Assembly (NCBI GenBank): GCA_026936335.1
Contig: JAPMXV010000024.1
Location: forward strand, 1 to 64,000
Length of the DNA: 64,000 nt
From: Mantamonas sphyraenae STR306
Taxonomy: Eukaryota; Protista; CRuMs
Direction: 5' to 3'
Position 1 is the stretch's first letter, and each line of letters begins with the position of its first letter. This document shows, in pieces, positions 14,001 through 30,000 of the stretch. A model generated the notes under the pieces. The model saw nothing but the letters and a program-made list of their open reading frames with translations. It was not told the DNA's origin and ran no database searches. The position numbers and the translations under genes were made by a program.

Positions 14001-17000
14001 ATGTCCATTCACACGGAGCACACCCATGTTGAGAGCCAGGAGCCCAACGTGCGGTTTATCCATCATGTGGTGCACGACAGCCCCGGCAAAGTGGTCAGCG
14101 TATGTCTTGTTGTCAGTTTGGTGCTCATTGCAGTGCCTTGGGTCGTGGCACCGCTCGAGTTTTCCGAGATTGGCTCTTTCTACGCCCGTAGCGATCGTGT
14201 CGCCGGTGAGTTTTTGCCCCGTTGTCGCATTTCATTGAACCCTCGTGGATGCGCATGATCCCACGCGTGCATTGTACATGTGGATCGCAGTGCGTGAGAA
14301 ACGTGCGCCGTGGGACGGTGTCGACGGTGGGACGGGCAACGGTGGGAAAGCGTGCAGCGTTTCGCCCAGGGACGCACGCACAGCGGCACAGCCCGATGCT
14401 GACACTGACACCATGGCACAGAGGAGTACGATGCGTTTCGTTCACTGGATCAATTCAAGCAGGAAGAGCAATCGGGCAACGACGTGCAAGCGCAGCAGAG
14501 CCAACCTCTAGGAGGCGTCTCCCTCATCTACATGGTGCCAGAGACAACGGAAGGCAACCGCAACATCTTTACTGCGGCACGGTTGGACAAGATCCGTGCG
14601 CTGGAGGCTAGGTTGCAGGCAGTGCAAGAGTGGACAGGGACATGTTTGCGTGCGTCGGGTTCAAACGTGTCGACGACGACGACGGCGACGGCGTGTGCGA
14701 AACCCATCTCGCCTGTGGAATCGCTGGGCTTCTACGACGCCAATGGCACGCAAGTGGACGTGCAAGCGCGTTTGCAGATGCTCGCAAGTCTGTCGGATGC
14801 GCAGCTGGACGCGCAGGGAGCGTCGTTTTTCTTTGACACGTCGTTCGGCAGCGGATCCGCGCAGTCGCTGTACACACGCAGCCAGTTTGTGTTTGGAGGC
14901 CCTTTGAAGGGGTACAAGAATGTGGTGGACCAACGCAAGGCCATCGAGCAGCGCACAAAGCTGGAACCGATCGGACGCCGCTGGCACGCCATCCTGTCGC
15001 CGTACCGCAACGACTCGACAGACAGCAAGGGTGACCCAGACCTGCAGGTTTTGTACATGGGCGACCATGTGACGGACTTGCAGATTGACCACATTGTGAC
15101 GACGGATCTGACGCTGTTTTCGCTTGCGGTGGTGCTTGTGTTGTCCATCATTGTGGTGCACACAGGCAGCCAGTTCCTGGGCATCATGAGCATCCTGCAC
15201 ATTGTGGGTTCGGCTTTGGTTGCATTGAGCTTCTATCGCATCTTCTATAGCGTGATGACGCAACAGAACCTGCTGGCATTGTTTGTGGTGCTGGGCATCG
15301 GCGCAAATGACGTGTTTGTGTACAAAGATGCGTGGATGCAGTCATACCAGGCCGGTGCACATGCCAACGCAAACATGTTGAATCGCATTGCGTGGACGTG
15401 GAACCGCAGCGTGACGGCAATGCTCACAACGTCGCTGACGAGTGCCGCTGCATTCATGAGCACCGTGTTCAACCCGATCCCGTCCATCCGTGTGCTCGGC
15501 GTATACACGGCCATGTGCATTCTGGTCAACTTTGCCCTGGTCATCACGTACTTCCCTGCCGTCGTGGTGCTGTGGTCGCGCAAGGGCTGGGACAGCCAAT
15601 GCTGCGGCAAAGAGCGCGAAGGCCCCGAGGAGCGTGCGACACGGCTCAAAAATGTGCCTGAGCACGAACTGGACAAAGAGGCGGCGTACGACATGCCCGC
15701 ACAATGCGGAGGTGCAACCCAGAGGCACACACAGAAGCGTGTGGTGCGCGAAAGCCGGCGCATCGAGCAATTCTTCCACGGCACGTACACGCCGTGGCTG
15801 TACAGGTCAAGGTGGGCAGTGGTTGCAGTGTCGCTGGCGTTGGTTGTGGCCGGCACGGTCCTTGCGTCGACAATCCAGGTGAACGACAGCGACGAGGATC
15901 CGTTTTTCCCCAGGGAGTTCTTCACGTCTGTGTTTGCGCGCATCATGTCAAAGGGGTTCCGGTTGTCGTCTCAGTCGGAGGTGGTGCAAGTGAACACGGT
16001 GTATGGCGTGGCCGGAATCGACCGCTCGGGCATCGATCCGAACGACCAAGAGTTGCTGGGCACGCCTGTGTTCCAGACTCAGGCCAAGTTTGCCCTGCAG
16101 AGCCCTGCCTCGCAGTTGGAGGTTCTCAAGACATGCACAGAGGGCGCAAAGTTGACGATGGTGCGCCAGGGCCAGGTGGAGTGTTTCATGGAGGATTTCC
16201 GCACGTTTGTGCAGGCATCCAATGGCACGTTTCCTGTGCCCGAGAACGCCTTTGTGGCCAGGCTGCAAGCGTTTCTGAACGACAACAAATGGTCCAACGT
16301 GCACGGCAAGAATGTGGACGTGAAGGACGGCCGTGTGCGATTTGCTGTGGTGCGTTTCAACACGACGATGCCGTTGCAGCCGTCGTTTTCGCGCAAGCAG
16401 CAAGAATACGCGCTGTGGTCGACATTCCAAGACGCACGCAACGCAGACGCACGCGAGACGGCCAATGCGTACCAGACGTCGAGTGTGTGGTCGAGCATGC
16501 GCACGCAGGAGGTGCTGGTGGAGAATGCACTTGTGGGTGCGCTTGTCTCGTTGGCGCTGGCCTTTGTGGTGCTCACGGTGGTGTCGTCCAACGTGATCAT
16601 TGCGGTGTTGGCCACCGTCAGCATTGCCTGTGTCCTCGTTTGCATTCTGGGCTTCATCCCGCTGGCCGGTTTCACCCTGGGTTTCATGGAGAGCATCTGC
16701 ATCACCGTCCTCGTCGGCCTCAGCGTCGACTTTGTGGTCCATTTGGCCATTGCGTACCGTGACTCGCCTCGTGTCACGCGCTACGAACGTGTGCAGGATG
16801 CCTTTACGGAGCTGGGGGTGTCCATTGTGGGCGGCGCCTTGACGACCGTGTCCACCACCACCACCCTGTTCTTCACCACGGTGGTCCTGCTGCTTCGCTT
16901 CGGTCAGATCATCCTCGTGGCCATCGCCCTGAGCTTTTTCTTTGCCAATGGCCTGTTTATGGCCCTCATGCTCATGGTCGGACCCGAAGGCGACGCCGGC

Positions 17001-17090
17001 GAGCTCAAACCCCTCTTTCGCCGATTGGTGGGCAGCAGAGGGGAGCAACACAGGCGACGAAGCAAGCATGTGCAGGAGGGAGAGGCATGA
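14001..17090 (+). CDS. Dispatched/Patched-family RND transporter with sterol-sensing domain, 2 exons (14001-14205, 14422-17090)
   Basis: Two-fold TM architecture with large luminal loops; GIGANDVFV, AMLTTSLTSAAAF and VGLSVDFVVH motifs; GT-AG intron keeps the frame. Confidence 0.88.
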
Positions 17091-17181
17091 GACGGGTTGG
17101 GGGGGGGTACAGTACAATGTGTGATGCAAGTGGGAATGGAGAACGATGACCATCCGTTGCCGCCACCAATCCATCCATCCC

Positions 17182-19122
17182 ATGCTGCACCGAGTGCGTC
17201 TGGTGGACACAGAGGACGGTGCGTCGAAAGCCAGGGTGGTGGAGGAGCAAGGGGCAGAGGTGCACGACGTGGGGCTGCACGCAGACGACCCGGAGGCATT
17301 CCAACCAGGCGTGGTGATCGGACGGACGACACTGGGAATCAAGGATGCCAAGGTGTCGCGTGAACATGCACGTTTGACACTGCACCAGGAAGAGGGGACG
17401 TCACAGAGCAGCGACACGGGCAGCAGCGGGTCGGCGAGGCTGCAAATCGCCGTGGAAGCGCTGGGAATGAACCCCATGGGCGTGTGGCGAGTGCGTACAG
17501 ACACACAGGGCCAACCCAGGTTGTCGCACGCCATGCTGTCCCGTGGTGAACGCACAGTGCTGGACACAGGCGATGTCGTGTCGCTTCTTCCGCTGCAGCA
17601 TGCCTTTCGCATCGACATCACCATGCAACCGTCGCAGGGCAGCCACAGCGACGCCTCGCTGGGGGAGGATAACCCTGAGGAGGCGGACGCAGGCGGCGCA
17701 GGCTCACGTGGCGAGAAGCGAGGGCGTGAGGAGGAGCGAGAGGAGGCGGAGGAGGAGGAGGAGGAGGAACAACACGAACGCAAGCGCAGCCGCGTGGAAT
17801 CGCAAGAATCGAGCTTGAGCTCTGGACTGGGCACGCCACTGTCACAGAGTAGCAGCCAGAGTCTGTGTGAGACCTCGCTTGCATTCCCATCCATCAGCAC
17901 GAGCGTGTTTCAGTTTCCAATCAACGATGCAGCAGCCATCCTGGTCGACGAGGTGGCACAGTTTCTGGGAAAACACGGCAACGGCAACCTGCGTCTGTAT
18001 CTGGTGGACATGAAGCACAGTGGGATGCTGAGACGTGTGGAGGAGCTGTGGGAGGCCAACGTTGGAGACAACCGCTTCCAGACTCTGGTGGCAGACATTA
18101 CACAGCTCAACACGGCCCACAGTCAACCATGCGCCACAATTGTAAACTCAACCAACTGGCGCTTCCACCCGGGCGGCTCTGGTGTGAACAAGGCGATCCA
18201 CACGGCAGCTGGGAGCGAGTTTTCACGCCGCACGCGCGAGCTGCACCATACAGCAGTCGCAGGACGGGTGTACCCTGTGCCTGTGCCTACATCCTCACCT
18301 CTGTACATTCAAGAGGGTGTGCGACGCGTGCTGCATGTGCTAGGACCGAACCTGAACACGCAGCGGCCCCAGTGTTTGGCAGACGACATCCCAACGGCCC
18401 ACCGTCTGTTGCACTCTTACTACGCGTCCATGTTGACCGAATGGTACAAAGACATTGACACGAGTGGCGCAGGAGAGGAGAAGGAGGGCACTGGAGGCAA
18501 GAGCAACTCCTTGTCCTCAAGCAGCGGTGGTGAGGAGACTCCAACCGCGAACAAAGGCAAAAGCAGCGCAGGGCCTGCGTGGAAGAGGGAGCTGCTGGCG
18601 TATGTTCTGCACCCGGAAAAGCACACGGATGTGGTTGTGCACCACGATGATCAGGTGACGGTGATCCACGACAAGTTTCCAAAGGCGCGTTTGCACATGC
18701 TGGTGATGCCGAACGAGGAGTTGGACAGCGTGGAGGACCTGGGACGCAAGCACGTGGCACTGCTGGACCACATGCTGGCAATTGGCAAGGAGCAGGGAGA
18801 CAAGTTTACCGCACGCACAGGGATCCCCGTGCGCATGGGTTTCCACGCAATCCCTAGCATGCAGCATCTGCACATGCATGTGATCTCGCAGGACTTTGCC
18901 TCGCCCTGCATGAAGACAAAGCGGCACTGGAATTCGTTCACCACAGAGTTCTTCCTTGATGCGGCCGAGGTTCGTGCTTCTCTCGAACAGGATGGAGGGA
19001 TTTCCATCCACAAGCCACACTTCCAGCCCATGGAGAAGCGGGATTTGGTCTGCCATCGCTGTGGGGAAGCGCTGAAGAACATGCCCACACTCAAACAGCA
19101 CATTGCAGAGTGCAAGGTGTGA
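17182..19122 (+). CDS. APTX: Aprataxin-like protein: FHA + macro domain + HIT + C-terminal zinc finger
   Basis: FHA: IGR...LGIKDAKVSREHA...LGMNP. Macro: IVNSTNWRFHPGGSGVNKAIHTAAG. HIT: HDKFPKARLHMLVMP, GFHAIPSMQHLHMHVISQDF, KRHWNSF. Zinc finger: CHRC...LKQHIAEC. Confidence 0.92.
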   Translation: MLHRVRLVDTEDGASKARVVEEQGAEVHDVGLHADDPEAFQPGVVIGRTTLGIKDAKVSREHARLTLHQEEGTSQSSDTGSSGSARLQIAVEALGMNPMGVWRVRTDTQGQPRLSHAMLSRGERTVLDTGDVVSLLPLQHAFRIDITMQPSQGSHSDASLGEDNPEEADAGGAGSRGEKRGREEEREEAEEEEEEEQHERKRSRVESQESSLSSGLGTPLSQSSSQSLCETSLAFPSISTSVFQFPINDAAAILVDEVAQFLGKHGNGNLRLYLVDMKHSGMLRRVEELWEANVGDNRFQTLVADITQLNTAHSQPCATIVNSTNWRFHPGGSGVNKAIHTAAGSEFSRRTRELHHTAVAGRVYPVPVPTSSPLYIQEGVRRVLHVLGPNLNTQRPQCLADDIPTAHRLLHSYYASMLTEWYKDIDTSGAGEEKEGTGGKSNSLSSSSGGEETPTANKGKSSAGPAWKRELLAYVLHPEKHTDVVVHHDDQVTVIHDKFPKARLHMLVMPNEELDSVEDLGRKHVALLDHMLAIGKEQGDKFTARTGIPVRMGFHAIPSMQHLHMHVISQDFASPCMKTKRHWNSFTTEFFLDAAEVRASLEQDGGISIHKPHFQPMEKRDLVCHRCGEALKNMPTLKQHIAECKV

Positions 19123-19206
19123 ACTCGCTGGTCGCAGACATTGCCCGTACACCACTGCGCCGCCTTTCTTATACGTTCTGCAATGGCGGCGTTTAGCAGA
19201 CACCTA

Positions 19207-19331
19207 GCACGGATGGCCGAGTGGTCTAAGGCGTTTGACTCAAGCGAAAGCTTACCTGCGAATGTGGGTACAAGTCAACAGAGTGTTCAAATATACGTAT
19301 GTATGCGTGGGTTCGAATCCCACTTCGTGCA
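19207..19331 (+). tRNA. tRNA-Leu(CAA) with 41-nt intron at canonical 37/38 (19245-19285)
   Basis: Same acceptor, D and T arms as the 11554 tRNA; anticodon stem TTTGA/TCAAA around CT-CAA-G; C32 pairs with the antepenultimate intron G; oligo-T terminator follows. Confidence 0.95.
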
Positions 19332-19558
19332 ATTTGTGTCTTTTTTTTTCTCATGCATCCAAAGCCCTATGGCCACAACGCATGCAGGTGTGTCCATGTG
19401 TCCATGTGTCCTACGCATCTGGTGGTTCAGATGCTGCAGCGCCAAGGCAAAGTTGAGGCGACGGATTCCACGCGGAGATCCGCTGAGCCCAGATCTTGCC
19501 CACAGCCATGCCAACAGAACCAATCGGGTGTTTATCATCTTTTTGTGTTTGGTGGTTT

Positions 19559-19614
19559 GTTTTGCTCTTTAGAAAAGAATGGTTGTGGCATTATTTGTTT
19601 TTGAATGCCAGGTT
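19559..19614 (-). promoter_or_regulatory. Conserved histone 3' element (H3 copy): variant stem-loop + HDE-like box
   Basis: Sense: AACC-TGGCATT-CAAAAACAAAT-AATGCCA-CAACCATTCTTTTCT-AAAGAG-CAAAAC; shared with H4, H2A and H2B. Confidence 0.85.
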
Positions 19615-19758
19615 GTTGTTTGTAGTTTGTTTGGCGAGGGTGCGGCTCCGACGTGCGTGGCTGGGTGGACGACTGCAGGGCTTTGCCCTCGTCCTTCCAC
19701 ACCATCCACCACTCCGCCGTCACCAAAATGCACACACTCGCGAGGCCAGGCCGGGCGC

Positions 19759-20175
<417 letters not shown>

Positions 20176-20470
20176 TTAGTGTTCTACGGGTTGTAGTTGT
20201 CTTGGGTCGGTTGGAGGAAAGCGCGCGCATCCGAGTATGTATCCCCACGACTGCTAATTTTGGCAGGTCGAGAGCAAACTGGGTCCCAAATTTGGTCGAC
20301 CACCGCCTGTGTTCTCACCCGCCGTCTGGGTACACATGCATGCAGGCATGTGCACACATCCACACATCCGGATACCCTGCATCATGTGCACTAACCACCC
20401 ATACCATCACTCCCATGCCCCCTCCATGTCCCCTCCGCTCACAATCCCGCCTCCCAGAATCCACACCTGA

Positions 20471-20848
<378 letters not shown>

Positions 20849-20905
20849 ACTGCTTGCCCACGTGCAGCAGCTACAGCTCTTGGTTGTTTCAACCACACAC
20901 AAAAA

Positions 20906-20962
20906 AACCTGGCATTCAAACACAAATAATGCCACACCCCATTCTTTTCTAAGGAGGAAAAC
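20906..20962 (+). promoter_or_regulatory. Conserved histone 3' element (H4 copy)
   Basis: AACC-TGGCATT-CAAACACAAAT-AATGCCA-CACCCCATTCTTTTCT-AAGGAG-GAAAAC. Confidence 0.85.
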
Positions 20963-21283
20963 AACCCACAACGAGAGTGAAAGAGAGATAAAAACAATGA
21001 TTTCAGCGAGGGGAAGGAGGAGGAGGAGACGGAGTGAGGATGCATGTCCACGTCTGCCTTGTGCATTACTTCCCTACCTCTCTTCCACGTGTTCACCGTG
21101 TCTTCCTGTGCACATCCCTGCGGCCGTGCACAATCTTTGCATCACCACCAGCCACTTCGCACACCAATCCCAACAACCACCTCGCCCCATCAACACAACA
21201 AACAAACATCCTCCTCCAACCACACACCCCCCCCCTCTCTCCCTCTCTCCAATCATCAGTTTTTATCCCTTTCACGCGTTCTT

Positions 21284-21341
21284 GTTTTTCCTCCTTAGAA
21301 AAGAGTGGGTTGTGGCATTATTTGTTTTTGAATGCCAGGTT
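21284..21341 (-). promoter_or_regulatory. Conserved histone 3' element (H2A copy)
   Basis: Sense: AACC-TGGCATT-CAAAAACAAAT-AATGCCA-CAACCCACTCTTTTCT-AAGGAG-GAAAAAC. Confidence 0.85.
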
Positions 21342-21530
21342 TTTTGCGTTGGTTTGCTGTGGTAGCATGTATGTGCCTTCCTCTGTGCCAGAACGCCAGG
21401 GACCGCCTGTAGACGCCGCTGAGCTTTGCCAGCAGATCGCCCCAGCCGCCCCGTTTGTCCTTTCAAACCACCTGCCGCTGTACACAGCTGCAGATGGCCC
21501 GCATCAGAGTCCGTTCACACCTGTGCCGAT

Positions 21531-21899
21531 TTACTCGTCCTTCTTGGTCTTGGACGGCAGGAGCACGGCGTGGATGTTGGGCAGCACACCACCCTGAGCG
21601 ATGGTCACGTCGCCCAGCAGCTTGTTCAGCTCCTCGTCGTTGCGCACAGCCAGCTGGATGTGGCGCGGCACAATACGCTTGCGCTTGTTGTCTCGCGAAG
21701 CGTTGCCAGCCAGCTCCAGGATCTCAGCCGTCAGGTACTCCAGCACAGCGGCCAGGTACACGGGGGCGCCAGCGCCGATGCGCGCGGCGAAGCGGCCGTT
21801 GCGCAGGTGGCGGTGCACACGACCGACCGGGAACTGCAGACCAGCCTTGCTGGAACGCGAGCGGCCTTGAGCCGCAGCCTTGGAAGTCTTCTTTGCCAT
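21531..21899 (-). CDS. H2A: Histone H2A
   Basis: [17 protein letters not shown]...[12 protein letters not shown]...[16 protein letters not shown]; no C-terminal SQ motif. Confidence 0.99.
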
Positions 21900-22257
21900 T
21901 ATGTAGGTTGTTGAAACGGGTAGGTTTGGGTTGGAACGTGCGGCGCCTGGCTGGTTCATCGCGTATTTGTACACCTGGAAATCTGCGTGTGCGGTGGGCT
22001 GTCCAAAACGGGAATCCCGCCATCCTCGCTTTCCTCCCGCACGCCCTTCACACGCGTTCCCACCTCCCACACACACCCATCCTACCTACAACACATCCCA
22101 TACCACCCCATGCACCCCTTCACACAGTCATCATACCCGCACACATCCCACGGTGAAGTTCCTGCACTGGCGGTGGGTGCAAGTATACTAGTACCGATGC
22201 GCGCCAAAAGCCCCACACCGCCCAACCCATCCCCAACAAGGAACACTACCCATCAAA

Positions 22258-22596
22258 ATGGCAAAGAAGGCAGGCAAGTCTGTACGAAAGAACGACGACA
22301 GCAAGCGTCGCAAGCGCCGCGTGGAGACCTACTCCTCGTACATCTACAAGGTGCTGAAGCAGGTGCACCCGGACACCGGTATCTCCAACCGCGCCATGTC
22401 CATCATGAACTCGTTCATCAACGACACCTTTGAGCGCATCGCCAACGAGGCTTCTCGTCTGGCCAAGGCCAACCGCAAGAGCACCATCTCGAGCCGAGAG
22501 ATCCAGACCGCTGTGCGTCTGCTCCTCCCGGGAGAGCTGGCCAAGCACGCCGTCAGCGAGGGCACCAAGGCCGTCACCAAGTACACCCAGGCATAA
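22258..22596 (+). CDS. H2B: Histone H2B (short N-terminal tail)
   Basis: [21 protein letters not shown]...[30 protein letters not shown]. Confidence 0.99.
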
Positions 22597-22718
22597 ACAG
22601 CTTGTTGGTGTGTGAGGACCAGTGACCTGTATTGCACGGCCACTGCGACGCACCTACCCTCGTGCAACGGAGGCGGGTGAACAACAACATCCGCCCTCGC
22701 GGCACACAAAAACCCAAA

Positions 22719-22776
22719 AACCTGGCATTCAAAACACAAATAATGCCACAACCCATTCTTTTCTAAAGAGGAAAAC
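22719..22776 (+). promoter_or_regulatory. Conserved histone 3' element (H2B copy)
   Basis: AACC-TGGCATT-CAAAACACAAAT-AATGCCA-CAACCCATTCTTTTCT-AAAGAG-GAAAAC. Confidence 0.85.
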
Positions 22777-22896
22777 ACCCCTTCTGTGTACAAACGATAA
22801 ACCGTTCCACCCCCTCTCATCACCACGCTCTCCTGCACACCAAACCCCAACCGACAATTCCCGTTCCCCATTTCCCAAACCATGCTTCCATTTCCG

Positions 22897-23223
22897 TCAC
22901 CCTTCGATCTCCACAACATCCTCATCTGCTGCAACCTCCTTGCCCTTTGCATCGTTGTCGTCCTCCTCCTTGTCAACACCCCCCACGCTCTGCGTGATGG
23001 CCATCCCCAGCGACTCCTCGCTTCCGTCCCCAAACATGCCCGAAAAGTCCAGCACCGTGATGTCGTACAGATCATCGCTTCCCTGCGTGCCTCCAAACAG
23101 CCAGATCTGGTTCCCCACCACGTTCGCAGTGTGGCCGTGGCGTCCCGGACGGTGCACCCCGCCCACAGGCAGCGAGATCCAGCGGTTGTTGGCCAGGTCG
23201 GCAAACGCCACCTTGTCCATCAT
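22897..23223 (-). CDS. Small protein with a single Kelch/galactose-oxidase blade and an acidic tail
   Basis: DLANNRW...RPGRHGHTANVVGNQIWLFGG...LYDITVLDF fits the Kelch pattern R-x-GH-x6-I-x-LFGG; coding-like codon use. Confidence 0.65.
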   Translation of the reverse strand: MMDKVAFADLANNRWISLPVGGVHRPGRHGHTANVVGNQIWLFGGTQGSDDLYDITVLDFSGMFGDGSEESLGMAITQSVGGVDKEEDDNDAKGKEVAADEDVVEIEG

Positions 23224-23296
23224 CTTCCCTCAAAACCATCCCTCTCTTCCCACACACCCCCACCCAACCAACCATAAACCCTCCCGACAACAAAAA

Positions 23297-24473
23297 ATGT
23301 CGTCCGACAACAAAAACTTTTCCCTGACCGAGCACAACGTAGTCTGCATTGACTACGCCAGCCTTGAAGAAGGCGCCGACCTGCACGAGGCCATCGAAAC
23401 CGCATACGGTCTCGAAGGCTTGGGCATCCTCGTCGTGTCCAACATCCCAGGCTTCGTCGAGGCCCGCCAAAACCTCTTGCCCCTGGCACGAACCTTTGCC
23501 AACCTGCCCGACGAGGCAAAGGCCAAGACCGAACTTCCCGAAACCAGCTATAGTTTCGGCTGGAGCCACGGCAAGGAAAAGTTCAAGGGCCGCGCGGGTA
23601 AGCGGAAGATTCTGGAGGGCAGCCGTTTGCGCAGAAAACTTCCGCACCGCCACTGACACTGCCACAGACACCATGAAGGGTTCCTACTATGCCAACCCGG
23701 AACACGATCGACCCGTCGACGATGAGGAGCTCATCAAGGCCCACCCGCACACCCTTTCACCGAACGTTTGGCCCGACGAGGATTTGCCCGAATTGGAGCC
23801 GGCCTTCAAGGAACTGGGCCAGCTCATCACTCGCGTCGGCAAAATGGTCGCCACCCACTGCGACAACTTTGTACACGACCGCACGGACAAGTACGAAGAG
23901 GGCCGCCTGCTCAGGCAGCTGCAGGAGTCGCTTGCGTGCAAGGCGCGCCTTTTGCACTATTTCCCGCAATATGAGACGGCCGAAGATGCCGACAAGCAAG
24001 AGGGCAAGGAGGACGCCCAGGACAGTGAGCCCGATTACGCCTCGTGGTGTGGCTGGCACCTGGACCATGGCAGCATCACGGGCCTCACATGTGCCATGTA
24101 CATCGACCACGACGGCAACGAGGTGGAGTGTCCCGACCCGGAGGCTGGTCTTTACATTGAGACCCGTGACGGCAGCATCACACGTGTTGTCTTCCCTCCA
24201 GACATGCTTGCCTTTCAGATTGGCGAATGTGCTCAGATCCAGTCTGGAGGCAGGCTGCGAGCCACTCCCCATTGTGTGCGTGGTGCCCAGGGACCCAAGG
24301 CCGTGGGCGTCTCCCGAAACACCCTCGCCGTGTTCATGGAACCCAACTTTGATTGGACCCTGGATCTGCCCGAGTCTGGCGAGGATCCCCAGATCAACGA
24401 CTACGAGGAGCGTGACCCGCCCATGACCTTTGGTGATTTCGACAAGATTCGCATCGCCCAATACTACTCCTGA
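23297..24473 (+). CDS. 2-oxoglutarate/Fe(II) dioxygenase (isopenicillin N synthase/DIOX-like), 2 exons (23297-23597, 23668-24473)
   Basis: GLGILVV, YSFGWSHGKE, RLLHYFP, WHLDHGS (HxD), TPHCVR (His), SRNTLAVF; GT-AG intron. Confidence 0.9.
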
Positions 24474-24539
24474 ACACACACTTCAATGCAATGGTGAATG
24501 TTGTTTTGCCCCCCACCCCCCTCAACCACCACTCTCCTC

Positions 24540-25700
24540 TCATTCTGCCTCTCCCTCGCCTTCTGCATCGTTTGCCCCCAGCATCAGTTCTGCAAACTCT
24601 TCCCACGTGTGAACCACCGTCACCTCCACATCTGGGTTCCGTGCAGCGTTGCGCAGCTCACGTTCCTCCTCGTCGTCTCCGCCGCCACCGAGAAACAGAA
24701 ACAGGTGGTCGACGTACGGGGACACCAGTTGGAGCACCTGGAAATGGTCGTCGATGAAGTGTGTGATGCCTGCCTCTTCGCATACAGGCAGCTTGTCCTC
24801 ACGGTTGGGTACAAAGTGCAGCCTCTCCTCGCCCACAATACCCGTGCGAGTCTCGAAATCGTGTGCCGCCATCCACTCCCGCGTTTTTCGTGTAATCGTC
24901 GATTTGGCCTTGCTCACAATGTGTGCTCGTCCCTCCGCAAACGGCCCTGCCGTCAGCTTGCCCAGGCTTTCAAACGCCCCGTCCACCTCGGGCGTCTCCA
25001 GGTACCCGTCGCTAAAGAATGATGTGTCTTCGCTGCCCGACTTTGCGATCAGCACGCCGCCCACGTCGACTCCCAGCACACACGAGTCGTCAGGAACAAA
25101 CGGCGCCTTCTTTTCCCGATCTGCATGGCTGATTCCGTTCCCATGGCCGCCACTCCCGCCCTCATCCTCGTGTCGGTGGTGTTCCTTGCGCTCCCTGTGT
25201 CCGCCATGCTCCCTGTGCTCCCTGTGCTCCCTGTGGCCGCCCACGTCGCGTTTGCGCTGATGTCGTCTGCCGTCGCGACGCGCCGTCCCGGCTCCTGCAC
25301 ACACGGGACACCCTGCAGCGTCCACTCCTTCGCTCTCCTGCTCCGCAAGATATCCAGACAGGCAGTATGGGTGGAACACATGCACCAGACTCTCTCCACG
25401 TGCCTCACGCACCGAAAAACACCCGTACCGGTGCGTCTCCTCGTTGTACACCGTCGCCACCATGTTGCCATCGCCCGCCTCTCCACCACCGCTCGATTCC
25501 CGCTCCTTTGATCCCAGTTTCCCGCCACACAGGCCACACAGTGCCTGCACACCGCGTCCTCCACGTCCTTCCTGCGTCACATACTCCACATCCCGTTTGC
25601 GGAACGCAAACTGCATCATCCCGTCCTTCAGCACATCCTTTTCGTTCTTTATGCACAGTTGTGTCCACACGCCACCCTCACTCGTCCCCGTGCTGCTCAT
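24540..25700 (-). CDS. RING-like zinc finger fused to a HAD-superfamily (nucleotidase-like) domain
   Basis: CGLC...HVFHPYC...CPVC, a His/Arg-rich linker, then GVDVGGVL, HIVSKA, DK and HFIDD (HAD motifs I-IV). Confidence 0.75.
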   Translation of the reverse strand: MSSTGTSEGGVWTQLCIKNEKDVLKDGMMQFAFRKRDVEYVTQEGRGGRGVQALCGLCGGKLGSKERESSGGGEAGDGNMVATVYNEETHRYGCFSVREARGESLVHVFHPYCLSGYLAEQESEGVDAAGCPVCAGAGTARRDGRRHQRKRDVGGHREHREHREHGGHRERKEHHRHEDEGGSGGHGNGISHADREKKAPFVPDDSCVLGVDVGGVLIAKSGSEDTSFFSDGYLETPEVDGAFESLGKLTAGPFAEGRAHIVSKAKSTITRKTREWMAAHDFETRTGIVGEERLHFVPNREDKLPVCEEAGITHFIDDHFQVLQLVSPYVDHLFLFLGGGGDDEEERELRNAARNPDVEVTVVHTWEEFAELMLGANDAEGEGEAE

Positions 25701-25872
25701 GCGCTGGTCCCTGTGTGGTTTGTGTGTGTCTGCCGTCGTCGACTTTTTGACAACCCCATCCACACACACACACACACACACACATCCCACTCCATCAAGA
25801 GACCAGTCCATCCTCTTTGTTCCACCTTTTGCTTTCCAATCCCTTTGAATTTTCCAATCCCTTTGCATTCCC

Positions 25873-26339
25873 TCACATCACAAACGAGAGGAATCCCAAC
25901 ATCAGCGCCACACCCCCCGCAGGCGTTGCACGTGTGTCGTCGCTGTAGTCCAAAGCCTTGGCATACAGCGGACCACAGAACAGCACCGTTCCGGTGGCCA
26001 GCAGCACTCCCGTCACGTTCGGGTTGCGTGCAAGCGGCGTCGCAAGCATGGCCAGCGCACCCATCCCGTGGTACTTGTTTGCCGTGCTAAACAGCTGCAC
26101 ACACACACACACACACGGATCCATAGTGTCAGCGTATCCGTGTCTCACACCTCAGTGTCCATCTCTCGTCCCACGTCGCTCCCCCACCCCACACGCACCT
26201 CTTGACGATATTGGAGAAGATCCCGCGAAGCATCATCCTCCGCGTCTGCCTCCTGCATCTTGAACGCATGCGCCTGGTAAGCACCCATGGCCACAGCTGT
26301 GGCTCCAGCAATTCCTCCCACGCGACGGAAAGTGGACAT
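25873..26339 (-). CDS. TMEM256: TMEM256/DUF423 small membrane protein, 2 exons (26339-26199, 26094-25873)
   Basis: GATAVAMGAYQAH...FSTANKYH...GTVLFCGPLY...TPAGG. Confidence 0.85.
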
Positions 26340-26415
26340 TGTGTGGTTTGACGATTCCAATGCCCGCCGCAACGCAACCCAACCCCCGCCCCACCTTCCC
26401 CGCTTTTTCCCAATC

Positions 26416-27000
26416 ATGTGGCGTCTCACCCTGCTCATTGCCTTTGCTCTCCTCATGCTGGTGGCTGCCAACGACGCAGATGTCAAGTTCAATGTGCAGT
26501 CGGAAGGCACTGACGGTCTGGACTGTGAGCACAAGGCGGCCAATGGCGATCGCGTGAGCGTGCACTACGCGGGACGCCTCGCACGCAACGGTCGCGAGTT
26601 TGACAACAGCCACAAACGCGGCAAACCGTTTACGTTTGTGTTGGGTGCCCGTCAGGTCATTCCCGGCTGGGACATGGGTGTCAAGGGCGCCTGCAAGGGC
26701 GAGAAACGCAAACTGACCATCCCTTCTCGGTACGGCTACGGTGCACGTGGCGCAGGACGTGCCATCCCAGGCCATGCCACCCTTGAGTTTGACGTCGAAA
26801 TCGTCGACATCCTTCCGGCCGGAGCCCCGCCTCCACCGGATACACGCACCACGGTGGAAAAGATGCGTGACAACTGGCCCTCCCTTGTTGCCGTCGCCGT
26901 CGTCATCCTTGCCCTTTCCTACTCTTTGCTGTGCACCGATTCGCCCGACGCAGCGACTCCCACCGCCACAAAGACCAAGCGCAGTGCCAAGCACAAGTAA
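26416..27000 (+). CDS. ER-type FKBP peptidyl-prolyl isomerase (signal peptide, C-terminal TM, basic tail; FKBP2/FKBP11-like)
   Basis: GDRVSVHYAGRL, FDNS, LGARQVIPGWDMG, LTIPSRYGYG, ATLEFDVE. Confidence 0.92.
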   Translation: MWRLTLLIAFALLMLVAANDADVKFNVQSEGTDGLDCEHKAANGDRVSVHYAGRLARNGREFDNSHKRGKPFTFVLGARQVIPGWDMGVKGACKGEKRKLTIPSRYGYGARGAGRAIPGHATLEFDVEIVDILPAGAPPPPDTRTTVEKMRDNWPSLVAVAVVILALSYSLLCTDSPDAATPTATKTKRSAKHK

Positions 27001-27027
27001 ATCACATCGATGACGACGTCCTTTCTT

Positions 27028-30000
27028 TCATTTCTCCAGCAGCTGCTGCATGCGCTGATGACCACGCAGAGCCACCAGTTGGCTCACTGTCGTCCACTTC
27101 CATTCCTGGGCTGCACGCAGAAACACACTTTTGAGTCCCAGAGCGCCCTCGTGGCTGTTTCCGGAGGACGACAACGACGAGCCACCCTCGCCACCCACGC
27201 GAGCACGCACCTTGGTTTCCACCTCGGCGCCGTGCACCATGAGCATGGCAAACATGTTGACACTGGTTTCGTCCTCGTCGTGTGCCTCTGCCAGGATGGA
27301 GAGTGCCGTTTGTTGCGATCCGTTGCGATGGTTGACATCCACCTTGGGATAGGTGATGAGGACGTTGAACACCGTCAGACTGCGCTCACGCACAGCCACC
27401 ATCAACGGCGTGTCGCCCTCCTTGTCCACCGCGTTCACATCCGCCTTGGCACTCAGAAGCCTCCTGGCAATCATCACCTCTGTGTTCGTCGTCGAGCCAC
27501 CCAGGCTGATCTTGCCATCTCCACCACTCCTTGACCCAGAGCTTTGTCCGGCGTCGCCATTCGACCCACTGCCACTGCCACTGCCACTGCCACTTCCGCT
27601 GCTTCCTGTGCCGTCCACAGCTGGCAACGCCAACACATGCAACGCCGTCATCCCATCTTCGTTGCGCACATTGCTGTCGTGTGACTTGTTTCGCATCTTG
27701 TGGATGATCCGTGTCAGCGCCTCCATGTTGCGCGTGATCACAGCGTGATGCAACGCAGGCTGGCTCGCCAGCTTCCGCGAATCCATCACTCCGCCGTGGC
27801 TCGCAGACACGCCCGCTTGCACCGCTGCTGCCGTTGCCGCCGATGACGACGATGACGACGACGACGACGATGAGGCGAATGACTTGGAGCCCCCGCCGCT
27901 GCCACTCGATCCCCATCCACGACGCGTGTCCACCACCACGGTTTCGTACACGTTGCGCGATTGCCGGGCCTGTCGCAGTAGATCCAAGAGCACTGTGTTC
28001 TGTGAGCGGTACGCCACCTCCACAGCATTGTCCCCGTTGCGCGCCATGCGATCGGGATCCGCCCCAGCGTCGAGCAGTGCACGCATCAACGCAGCCTGTT
28101 CGGGGCTCTCCTGCCTGCGAGCAAGCAACACAGGCACAGGCGCACCTGTGGCCCTGTCCTGAGCGTTTGGATCGGCGCCATGGTGCAACAGCCGGCGTGC
28201 AAGCACATACCGACCCTCATTCACAGCCAGGCTCAGCGGCGTCGCACGGTCATCGTTCGCCGCGTTCACATCCGCACCAGGAACACGCACCAGCACATCC
28301 AAACATGCCACCAGCGCCGTTTCGCCACCAATCACACGTGACAGCGTCGCCGTGGCCAAGCAATGCAACGGTGTGTTTCCTTGCACATCCCTGGCCACCA
28401 CCTGACCCGAGTGGATGTCCAACACACGTCGCACGGCACGCACATCGCCTCCAGCCACTTCGTGGTGCAGCAGCGTACGATGCTCCGGATCCATCAGCGC
28501 CAGCATCCGCACATTGTTGTTCCGTCGCGCCACACGCTCCACCGTCTCGCCATCCACAAACGGGTTGCGCATGCTTGCGTCCGCCCCATGTTCCAACAGC
28601 AGTGCAAACATGTCCACGTCTGCCTCCTGCTCCTTGTCCGACGCCAACACCAGCAGCGGCGTGCGGCCCTCGGCATCCGCAAGGTTCGCGTCCGCTCCAC
28701 GTTCCAGCAGCAATGCCACCATATCCACGTTGCCCGCATGCGTAGCAATCAACAGCGGTGTCTCTCCACTCGCACTTGTTGCGTTCACCTCGGCTCCGTA
28801 GTCCAGCAGCAGCCGTGCAATCGCCTGCTGGTGCTCGTCCAAAATTCGCCGCTCTTCCTTGGTCGGTTCGGCCTCTCCTTCCACCTGCTGCAACGCAAAC
28901 ATGGCGTAATGCAACGGAGTGTATCCTTGCACGTCCAACGGGTCCACTGCCAGCGCAGGCAACGAATCGTGGTGCCGTTGTGCCACGTGTTGACGCGCTC
29001 TCCCACCATTTCGCCGTTGCTGCTCCTGTCGCTTCATCTCCTCTTCCAGAATATCGATGACCGCAGCCAAGTCCCTGTCCACCGCCGCGTAGTGCAGTGC
29101 CGTCATTTCGTTCGGATCCAACAGGTCGATCAGCCGCTTGCTCCCCATTTGTTGAGCCATCATCCACGCCGCCTGCTTCTCCGCCTGCAACTCGTCGTCG
29201 CCCAGAAGAGACAAAAGACGTGACATCATGTCCACCAGTTTGTCGTCTTCTGACTGTTCGGCAAGTGCAAGCAGCACGCTGCGACCGTTCTGATCCACCA
29301 AGCGCGGGTTTGCGCCCTTGTCCACCAGCCGATGGAACAGAAGAAAGTTGTACGATCCTCCTTCTGCCGCCAGCAGCAACGGCGTCTGACCCTGGAACGA
29401 GGCCAAATCCACATTGGCACCGTACTCCAGCAGCACATTCAACACCGCCATGTACTCCTCGTCACTGTGGCTGGGTGCCACGTTGTCCATCCCACCACCA
29501 CCGCCACCCTTTCCCGGGCTGCTAGCGGGCGAATCTGTTTCGTTGCTGCTCGATGACGTCGCACTCAGGTGCGTGGCACGGCCCCCGTGAACAGCCAGCG
29601 CTTCCAGACGCATCTTTTCCTCGTTGCGAGTGAGAAACACGTGATGCAACGCGGTCATGCCGTGAAAGTCCACCTTGTCGGCCAGTTGACCCGACGACAA
29701 CAGTGCACGCAGCATGTTCACGTCCATGCGTCGCACCGCGTTGTGCAAATCCGTTTCACCGCGTGCGTACTCCTGCAACAGTGCAATCATGCGTGTGTTG
29801 TCCATGGCCAGCGCTGCATCCAGCACCGTGTCTCCCGTGTACGGATTCGTCATCTGCGGATCCGCCCCCGCTGCCAGCAGCAGCTCAAACATGCGCACGT
29901 CGTCCTCCTGTTCCCCCTCATCCTCGTTCGCCAGCAGATACAGGGGCGTTTGTCCGTCCACATCCATCGTGTTCACGTTTGCCCCGTGGTCCAGGAGCAC

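What the first reader, a model, noticed from the sequence alone, without database searches (positions are those of the whole stretch)
22749..22776. Fixed-spacing HDE-like box (TTCT-AARGAG) predicts a U7-like guide RNA in a protist
Seen: in all four copies AAAGAG/AAGGAG starts 15-16 nt after the stem (H3 15; H4, H2A, H2B 16), preceded by invariant TCTTTTCT. The only change in the box is A/G, which a U in a partner RNA would tolerate. Established: the metazoan histone downstream element has an AAAGAG core about 15 nt past the stem-loop and pairs with U7 snRNA; from memory, vertebrate U7 contains CUCUUUUAGAA, nearly the complement of TTCTAAAGAG. U7-dependent processing is generally regarded as animal-specific. 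Inference: a small RNA containing CUCUUUAGAAAAGA may exist. Alternative: YTCTTTTCTAARGAG folds into a second small hairpin resembling the core of the canonical stem-loop (CTCTTTTC-AGAG) with a 3-nt insert, giving a tandem-hairpin signal.
Basis: partly seen in the sequence, partly recalled or inferred. Interest (0 to 1): 0.8.

Follow-up and report, generated by a model that had tools for sequence, protein, structure and literature searches.

The report
Histone 3' box beside divergent stem-loop
Every core histone gene of this protist carries the same 21-base box a fixed 15-17 bases behind an unusual stem-loop, and the genome encodes SLBP and an Lsm11 orthologue, so an animal-type U7 cutting machine probably exists here, but the guide RNA predicted to pair with the box was not found.

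Summary
TCTTTTCTAARGAG occurs four times in the window and 15 times in the 25-Mb genome, plus one copy with a single change. All 16 lie behind H3, H4, H2A or H2B, 15-17 nt after a 7-bp stem (TGGCATT/AATGCCA) with a 10-12-nt loop. The reversed control pattern has no hits.

- For it: the genome encodes a canonical SLBP that keeps the arginine reading G at stem position 2. That fits the first stem-loop and not the box hairpin.
- For it: the genome also encodes a clear Lsm11 orthologue. A profile built on it hits human LSm11 at E=4e-34, N-terminal motif included, against 1e-13 for SmD2.
- For it: the box hairpin is weak (-2.8 kcal/mol, z -0.3).
- Against it: the Rfam U7 model and seven complementarity patterns (one of them tied to a small-RNA promoter element) found no complementary small RNA outside histone loci. 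No Lsm10 was seen, and read mapping failed.

A third conserved module, GATAAA 23-32 nt further downstream in all 16 copies, allows a rival layout.

My best reading, at about 0.4, is that the box is the docking element for a U7-type snRNP. An October 2026 preprint already reports LSM10/11 widely outside animals. An earlier scan note covers the same element.

The parts
22723..22748 (+). H2B stem-loop 1: TGGCATT / 12-nt loop CAAAACACAAAT / AATGCCA. It is the likely SLBP site, with a GGC...GCC base like the canonical histone stem-loop.
   Evidence: (-6.4 kcal/mol, z -2.7).
22749..22755 (+). H2B 3' flank CAACCCA. It resembles the animal ACCCA flank and is the likely cleavage region.
   Evidence: Sequence. 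The resemblance rests on established knowledge and the cleavage site is not mapped.
22756..22776 (+). H2B box TTCTTTTCTAAAGAGGAAAAC, the finding itself. AAAGAG is at 22765-22770, 16 nt after the stem.
22796..22801 (+). H2B downstream GATAAA module, 25 nt after AAAGAG.
20910..20934 (+). H4 stem-loop 1 with an 11-nt loop.
20942..20962 (+). H4 box TTCTTTTCTAAGGAGGAAAAC.
20987..20992 (+). H4 downstream GATAAA.
21313..21337 (-). H2A stem-loop 1 with an 11-nt loop.
21285..21305 (-). H2A box CTCTTTTCTAAGGAGGAAAAA, with C instead of T at the first position.
21262..21267 (-). H2A downstream GATAAA.
19586..19610 (-). H3 stem-loop 1 with an 11-nt loop.
19559..19579 (-). H3 box TTCTTTTCTAAAGAGCAAAAC. This copy has GAGC, whereas the other H3 copies have GAGG.
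19531..19536 (-). H3 downstream GATAAA.

Best explanation
The box is the downstream half of a histone-specific, roughly 57-nt bipartite signal for pre-mRNA 3'-end processing.

The upstream half is a divergent SLBP-type stem-loop. It has a 6-7-bp stem starting GGC, an enlarged 10-12-nt A-rich loop and a 3' flank AC(A)ACC(C)CA.

The box YUCUUUUCUAARGAGGAAAAC lies where the animal histone downstream element lies. It most likely docks a U7-type snRNP containing Lsm11, probably by pairing its purine run AARGAGGAAAA with a small RNA that is still unidentified. That would place the cut in the CCCA region between stem-loop and box.

Shown here: the element, its restriction to histone genes, its spacing, SLBP and Lsm11. 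Inferred: that SLBP binds stem-loop 1, that a U7-like RNA exists, that it pairs with the box, and where cleavage occurs.
For: - All 16 copies are behind core histone genes, with 0 hits for the reversed control.
- AARGAG starts 15-17 nt after the stem. In animals the HDE is purine-rich and lies about 15 nt downstream of the cleavage site (PMC5435866).
- SLBP is present at 96.9 bits. Its RNA-binding domain aligns with solved SLBPs and keeps the Arg181-equivalent. That arginine makes the only base-specific contacts, to G at stem position 2 (PMC10388802). Stem-loop 1 (GGCAUU) has that G and the box hairpin does not.
- Lsm11 orthologue: the best PDB hit is human LSm11 at E=1e-11, against 6e-3 for SmD2. 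A profile with nine homologues hits LSm11 at E=4e-34, including the N-terminal LDxxSPxFDxxxAL motif, against 1e-13 for SmD2. The nearest Atlas clusters carry LSM11_N. A separate SmD2 gene exists.
- Stem-loop 1 folds in all four genes (z -2.7). The box hairpin is weak, is not predicted for H4, and changes register between the other three genes.
Against: - No small RNA gene complementary to the box was found.
  - The best Rfam U7 hit scores 15.8 bits and lies in coding sequence.
  - The exact 14-mer and the wobble-tolerant 21-mer with up to 3 mismatches hit nothing above control outside histone loci.
  - CCTCYTTAGAA has one non-histone hit, with no Sm site.
  - Of 68 fetched TTTTCCTCYTT sites, none is U7-like.
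  - The anti-core plus Sm-site patterns, and the promoter plus anti-core plus Sm pattern, gave no candidate.
- No Lsm10 candidate was seen.
- A 21-nt invariant block is unlike the variable animal HDE.
- The pyrimidine half of the box has no animal counterpart.
- A further conserved GATAAA module downstream permits another layout.
- There are no transcript data.
Confidence: 0.4

Rival explanations
1. The box belongs to the mature mRNA. Stem-loop 1 and the box, as a weak second hairpin or a protein-binding site, together form a composite 3' terminus. Cleavage occurs after GAGGAAAAC. The GATAAA block 23-32 nt further on is then the true downstream element, either a U7 site or another cleavage-factor site.
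For: - GATAAA is present at a constrained distance in all 16 copies, while the hexamer is rare elsewhere: 8 in the 64-kb window on both strands, 4 of them at the histone genes.
- Its variable purine-rich flanks resemble animal HDEs more than the invariant box does.
- YUCUUU/AARGAG can pair. The H2A U-to-C change turns a U-G pair into C-G, and the A/G change keeps U-A or U-G.
- Invariance of all 21 nt suits a structured or protein-bound RNA.
Against: - The hairpin is only -2.8 kcal/mol with z -0.3. It is not predicted for H4 and changes register between the other three genes.
- One H2B copy carries a disrupting U-to-G change.
- The hairpin lacks the G at stem position 2 that SLBP needs (PMC10388802).
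Confidence: 0.25
2. Histone mRNAs here are made by ordinary cleavage and polyadenylation. The stem-loop is an SLBP-bound regulatory element in the 3' UTR. The box supplies a U-rich or purine-rich auxiliary element of a poly(A) site, and GATAAA may act as a signal for a downstream site. Lsm11 would then serve another or a vestigial role.
For: - A 2026 preprint describes lineages that combine SLBP and stem-loops with polyadenylation features (10.64898/2026.10.14.759114).
- The layout of A-rich loop, CA and U-rich tract resembles a poly(A) site (sequence).
- No U7 RNA was found.
- A relative's H2B, 92% identical, appears in a transcriptome-derived protein set.
Against: - AATAAA and ATTAAA are absent from the whole 64-kb window, and GATAAA is not a general gene-end motif.
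- The element occurs only at core histone genes.
- Lsm11 is known only as a U7 snRNP subunit (PMC5435866), and the conserved N-terminal motif is retained.
Confidence: 0.17
3. The conserved modules act at the DNA level or on the opposite strand. Read antisense, the flank runs CCAAT-like, then TTTATC, then about 25 nt, then the perfect complement of the box, then a hairpin, then (in three of the four gene types) a T-run. Each histone gene could therefore encode its own short antisense RNA or a terminator.
For: - The order and spacing of GATTG(G), GATAAA, the box and the stem-loop are shared by the gene types (H2B lacks GATTG); a run of five or more A, an antisense T-run, precedes the stem in H4, H2A and H2B only.
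- No trans-encoded complement was found.
Against: - Any sequence is complementary to its own antisense strand.
- The motifs are short and degenerate. H2B lacks the CCAAT-like part and H3 lacks the T-run.
- No transcript evidence exists.
- The only Sm-like sequence would sit inside a hairpin loop.
Confidence: 0.05

Closest known systems
Animal histone downstream element (HDE) paired with U7 snRNA
   Same: - Purine core AAAGAG/AAGGAG.
- Position a fixed short distance 3' of a histone stem-loop.
- Restricted to core histone genes.
- The genome has SLBP and Lsm11.
   Different: - It is invariant over about 21 nt, whereas animal HDEs are variable.
- It has a pyrimidine half (YUCUUUUCU).
- The partner stem-loop has a 10-12-nt loop.
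- No U7 RNA with a UCUUU box plus an RUUUNUCYNG Sm site (PMC5054213) was found.
- Cleavage is unmapped.
Canonical histone 3' stem-loop (Rfam RF00032) bound by SLBP
   Same: - Stem-loop 1 keeps the GGC...GCC stem base, an A-rich 5' flank and an ACCCA-like 3' flank.
- SLBP keeps the Arg181-equivalent.
   Different: - The loop is 10-12 nt instead of 4.
- No RF00032 hit at E<=10 lies on these elements: none in window 15000-30000 and none genome-wide.
- The box hairpin has a 3-5-nt loop and no G at stem position 2.
Non-animal histone 3'-end systems surveyed in 10.64898/2026.10.14.759114 (Zhao, Bond, Ni Leathlobhair 2026)
   Same: SLBP, stem-loops and LSM10/LSM11/FLASH homologues are reported widely outside animals, and a U7-like RNA is predicted in Rozella.
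   Different: - That survey scanned only for 6-bp/4-nt stem-loops and counted an HDE as 'AAA' or 'AAGA'.
- It states that other loop lengths would be missed.
- Its text does not mention Mantamonas or CRuMs.

Membership tests
U7-dependent histone processing signal (stem-loop + HDE) | Purine-rich element a short fixed distance downstream of the stem-loop or cleavage site. | tested here: met
   AARGAGGAAAA starts 15-17 nt after the stem in all 16 copies. The animal HDE lies about 15 nt past the cleavage site (PMC5435866).
U7-dependent histone processing signal (stem-loop + HDE) | A U7 snRNA with a 5' region complementary to the HDE, a deviant Sm site (RUUUNUCYNG) and a 3' hairpin. | tested here: inconclusive
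   None was found by RF00066 (15.8 bits, in coding sequence) or by seven pattern searches. Sensitivity was limited. Complementarity shorter than about 8-11 contiguous nt, or pairing only with the pyrimidine half, would be missed. 37 rows, 99 of the 3-mismatch rows, and 26 of the 94 non-histone TTTTCCTCYTT sites (9 unlisted, 17 listed but not fetched) were not inspected.
U7-dependent histone processing signal (stem-loop + HDE) | The U7-specific protein Lsm11, with its N-terminal FLASH-binding region. | tested here: met
   The protein is L035:949-1707(+), 253 aa. Alone it hits human LSm11 at E=1e-11. In a profile it hits at E=4e-34 over the N-terminal motif plus the Sm fold, against 1e-13 for SmD2. 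The nearest Atlas clusters carry LSM11_N. Binding to FLASH itself was not tested.
U7-dependent histone processing signal (stem-loop + HDE) | The U7-specific protein Lsm10. | tested here: inconclusive
   The 21 LSM-domain hits are accounted for by SmB/D1/D2/D3/E/F/G, Lsm1-8, NAA38, ataxin-2 and Lsm11, assigned by eye from conserved motifs. No spare SmD1-like gene remains. A gene split by introns or highly divergent could be missed.
U7-dependent histone processing signal (stem-loop + HDE) | FLASH. | not tested
U7-dependent histone processing signal (stem-loop + HDE) | Endonucleolytic cleavage between stem-loop and HDE, giving non-polyadenylated mRNA. | not testable with these tools
Canonical histone stem-loop RF00032 / SLBP site | 6-bp stem, 4-nt U-rich loop, G at stem position 2. 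| tested here: not met
   No RF00032 hit at E<=10 lies on these elements. Stem-loop 1 has the G but a 10-12-nt loop. The box hairpin has U at position 2 and a 3-5-nt loop.
Canonical histone stem-loop RF00032 / SLBP site | Cognate SLBP with a conserved RNA-binding domain. | tested here: met
   PF15247 scores 96.9 and 94.2 bits. The protein aligns to Drosophila and human SLBP structures with the Arg181-equivalent kept.

The most novel reading that the evidence does not exclude
Mantamonas, a deep-branching CRuMs protist, uses a genuine U7-type RNA-guided cleavage system. Its guide RNA is too divergent for the Rfam model, and its target is this invariant 21-nt box next to an expanded-loop stem-loop. 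That would place RNA-guided histone 3'-end processing at or near the root of the Amorphea+CRuMs lineage, with a defined target/guide pair outside animals. A wilder variant is that the guide is transcribed antisense from the histone 3' flanks themselves, which would hint at how U7 arose.
Probability: 0.3. Interest if true: 0.85.

Novelty: new variant of a known kind. Interest (0 to 1): 0.6.

Why it matters
It has been an open question since the 1990s-2000s whether U7-guided histone mRNA processing is an animal invention or an ancestral eukaryotic mechanism. A 2008 survey called U7 'virtually certain' to be restricted to metazoa (PMC5054213). A 2026 preprint finds the proteins widely but no defined RNA target or guide.

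This case supplies a small-genome protist with SLBP and Lsm11. All 16 core histone genes share one invariant candidate target beside a non-canonical stem-loop. That gives a concrete sequence to test by 3'-end mapping and by sequencing RNAs bound to Lsm11 or Sm proteins. It also shows that surveys restricted to 6-bp/4-nt stem-loops miss real elements.

Tried and rejected
U7 RNA searches:
- The Rfam U7 model on the whole genome gave one hit of 15.8 bits inside coding sequence.
- No Rfam histone stem-loop hit lies on the elements. The best genome hit, 22.5 bits, is in coding sequence.
- Complement searches:
  - The 14-mer hit histone loci only.
  - The wobble-tolerant 21-mer with up to 3 mismatches gave 199 hits against 168 for the control. 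The excess is the histone copies, and 11 non-histone loci among the 0-2-mismatch hits showed nothing U7-like.
  - CTCYTT..TTTNTCYNG gave 137 hits against 145 for the control. The C34 pair is a duplicated flank without a hairpin.
  - CCTCYTTAGAA gave one non-histone site, on C60, with no Sm site.
  - TTTTCCTCYTT has 94 non-histone sites. 68 were inspected and none is U7-like.
  - CCTCYTT N0-16 ATTTNT gave 63 hits against 21 for the control. 20 regions (covering 23 of the hits) were fetched. The C59/C46 pair lies in a long segmental duplication of over 600 nt.

Promoter route:
- The motif GGTCGCAAGT came from an earlier scan note. I confirmed it 67-68 nt upstream of 5S (five copies), tRNA-Sec, SRP RNA, a tRNA and U1 by Rfam, and upstream of U3, U6 and a U4atac-like gene by eye.
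- None of the 37 exact sites precedes a U7-like RNA.
- The combined promoter core, anti-core and Sm pattern gave 3 chance-like hits.

Other searches:
- The metagenome scan for the box returned 19 bacterial chance matches.
- The exact H4 look-up found nothing.
- The word-indexed homologue search with Lsm11 found nothing.
- The N-terminal 50 aa of Lsm11 alone did not hit PDB LSm11. Only the profile did.
- Pfam listed only the LSM domain for Lsm11.

Read mapping:
The H3 protein was therefore not used as a query.

Full report
**What is there.** The window holds a histone quartet.
- H3 lies at 19759-20169 on the minus strand.
- H4 lies at 20537-20848 on the plus strand.
- H2A ends at 21531 on the minus strand.
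- H2B lies at 22258-22596 on the plus strand.

Each gene is followed by the same element. It runs: an A-rich run, CC, TGGCATT, a 10-12-nt A-rich loop, AATGCCA, C(A)ACC(C)CA, YTCTTTTCTAARGAG, (G/C)AAAA(C/A/G).

The 14-mer TCTTTTCTAARGAG occurs 4 times in the window, against 0.01 expected. It occurs 15 times in the 25.06-Mb genome, against 0 for the reversed control. A 16th copy, an H2B on C55, has TCTGTTCT. All copies lie behind core histone genes in clusters on C14, C24, C41, C55 and C65.

AARGAG starts 15 nt (H3) or 16 nt (H4, H2A, H2B) after the 7-bp stem in the window, and 15-17 nt genome-wide.

**Organism.** I did not verify this independently. The 25-Mb size fits my recollection of the published genome size, which I did not check. 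The closest H2B in the protein collection, at 92% identity, is a EukProt transcriptome entry.

**Machinery.**
- *SLBP.* A six-frame Pfam scan of the genome finds one strong SLBP RNA-binding domain at 96.9 bits. The 236-aa protein aligns with solved Drosophila and human SLBP domains and keeps the Arg181-equivalent (KCSKRMFDG against KYSRRAFDG). According to PMC10388802, summarising the crystal structure, Arg181 contacting G7 (stem position 2) is the only base-specific SLBP-RNA contact, and G7 is required for binding. Stem-loop 1 begins GGC. The proposed second hairpin begins YUC. This argues that stem-loop 1 is the SLBP site.
- *Sm and Lsm proteins.* The LSM-domain scan gave 21 hits. By eye, from conserved motifs, these are SmB, D1, D2, D3, E, F, G, Lsm1-8, NAA38, ataxin-2 and one extra protein.
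- *Lsm11.* The extra protein is 253 aa (L035:949-1707).
  - Its best PDB hits are human LSm11 at E=1e-11, against 6e-3 for SmD2.
  - An exhaustive HMMER search found 565 relatives, the top ones in Amoebozoa, green algae and a fern. One is named LSM11.
  - A profile of ten members hits human LSm11 at E=4e-34, from the N-terminal LDxxSPxFDxxxAL motif through the Sm fold, against 1e-13 for SmD2.
  - The nearest Atlas clusters carry the Pfam family LSM11_N.
  - From established knowledge, Lsm11 is a U7-snRNP-specific subunit whose N-terminal region binds FLASH (PMC5435866).
- *Not found or not tested.* No Lsm10 candidate was seen, and FLASH was not tested.

**Structure.** Stem-loop 1 is predicted in all four genes at -6.4 kcal/mol, z -2.7. 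The box hairpin is marginal at -2.8 kcal/mol, z -0.3. It is not predicted for H4 and changes register between the other three genes. The few variants do not discriminate between intramolecular pairing and pairing with a trans RNA. These variants are A/G in the core, U/C at the first box position in H2A, GAGC in one H3 copy and U-to-G in one H2B copy. The stem-loop is not canonical. No RF00032 hit at E<=10 lies on these elements, either in window 15000-30000 or genome-wide.

**The predicted guide RNA.** I searched the whole genome as follows.
- The Rfam U7 model gave 15.8 bits, in coding sequence.
- The exact complement hit histone loci only.
- A wobble-tolerant 21-mer with up to 3 mismatches showed no excess beyond the histone copies.
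- The animal-type layout UCUUU plus RUUUNUCYNG (PMC5054213) gave counts equal to the control.
- Two 11-mer windows over the purine core were searched.
- The anti-core plus a generic Sm site was searched.
- A promoter-anchored pattern was searched.

It proved real. Rfam places it 67-68 nt upstream of 5S, tRNA-Sec, SRP RNA, a tRNA and U1. By eye it is also upstream of U3, U6 and a U4atac-like gene. None of the 37 exact sites precedes a U7-like RNA.

No candidate survived. These searches would miss several things:
- a guide with fewer than about 8-11 contiguous complementary bases;
- a guide pairing only with the pyrimidine half of the box;
- a guide with an unusual Sm site;
- anything in the rows the tools did not list or that I could not fetch.

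**A third module.** GATAAA lies 23-32 nt after AARGAG in all 16 copies and is followed by GATTG(G) in H3, H2A and the H2A variant, a looser GATT in H4, and nothing comparable in H2B. The hexamer occurs only 8 times in the window on both strands, 4 of them at the histone genes. AATAAA and ATTAAA are absent from the whole 64 kb. This module allows a rival layout in which the box is retained in the mature RNA and GATAAA is the downstream element.

**Transcripts.** The cleavage site is therefore unknown.

**Comparison and novelty.** In layout the element works like the animal stem-loop plus HDE signal. It fails membership of the canonical stem-loop family, and its U7 partner is unproven. A preprint of October 2026 (10.64898/2026.10.14.759114) already reports LSM10, LSM11 and FLASH widely outside animals and a U7-like RNA in Rozella. 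Its method (6-bp/4-nt stem-loops, HDE counted as 'AAA' or 'AAGA') would miss this element, and its text does not mention Mantamonas. The same scan also noted the 57-nt element on this window (s1-579923).

**Verdict.** I class it as a new variant of a known kind, with interest 0.6.

Noticed in passing
window 19531-19536(-), 20987-20992(+), 21262-21267(-), 22796-22801(+); all 16 histone loci: GATAAA lies 23-32 nt after the box in every core histone gene. It is followed by GATTG(G) in H3, H2A and the H2A variant, GATT in H4, and nothing comparable in H2B. Read on the opposite strand this is CCAAT-like plus TTTATC, about 25 nt before the box complement. Its function is unknown.
   Followed up: partly
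whole window: The canonical poly(A) hexamers AATAAA and ATTAAA are absent from both strands of the 64-kb window, where about 9 of each are expected from composition. This organism's poly(A) signal must be something else.
   Followed up: partly
L119-L123, L125, L126, L140-L142, L145, L124 (genome C5, C23, C25, C60, C62, C69, C6): GGTCGCAAGT sits 67-68 nt upstream of 5S rRNA (five copies), tRNA-Sec, SRP RNA, one tRNA and U1 (all Rfam-confirmed). By eye it is also upstream of U3, U6 and a U4atac-like gene. This looks like one promoter element shared by Pol II-type and Pol III-type small RNA genes.
   Followed up: yes
L146 = G000:C70:278500-279800: Four tandem units of about 300 nt each start with the GGTCGCAAGT promoter element. 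Three of the four share a core (CACATGTCCACACGTCTGAG...GCGTGGCGAC); the first unit differs. None has an Rfam match. They may be an unclassified small-RNA gene array.
   Followed up: no
L115 (G000:C1:199701-199971) and L147 (G000:C20:75189-75459): Two further promoter-element-driven transcripts of about 100-115 nt end in T-runs. Neither has an Rfam hit at E<=0.01.
   Followed up: no
L006 (+) = G000:C41 cluster: The H2A of the C41 cluster has a different C-terminus (...SQSQVF), which looks H2A.X-like. It carries the same 3' element with a 10-nt loop.
   Followed up: no
L113 / L114 (G000:C59:147600-148800 and C46:161600-162800): A near-identical segmental duplication of over 600 nt, with indels, includes a 17-20-bp perfect palindromic hairpin.
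   Followed up: partly
window 19207-19331 (+): Rfam calls a tRNA spanning 125 nt (49.5 bits), presumably containing an intron. ARAGORN finds no tRNA in the window. It lacks the GGTCGCAAGT element at -67.
   Followed up: partly
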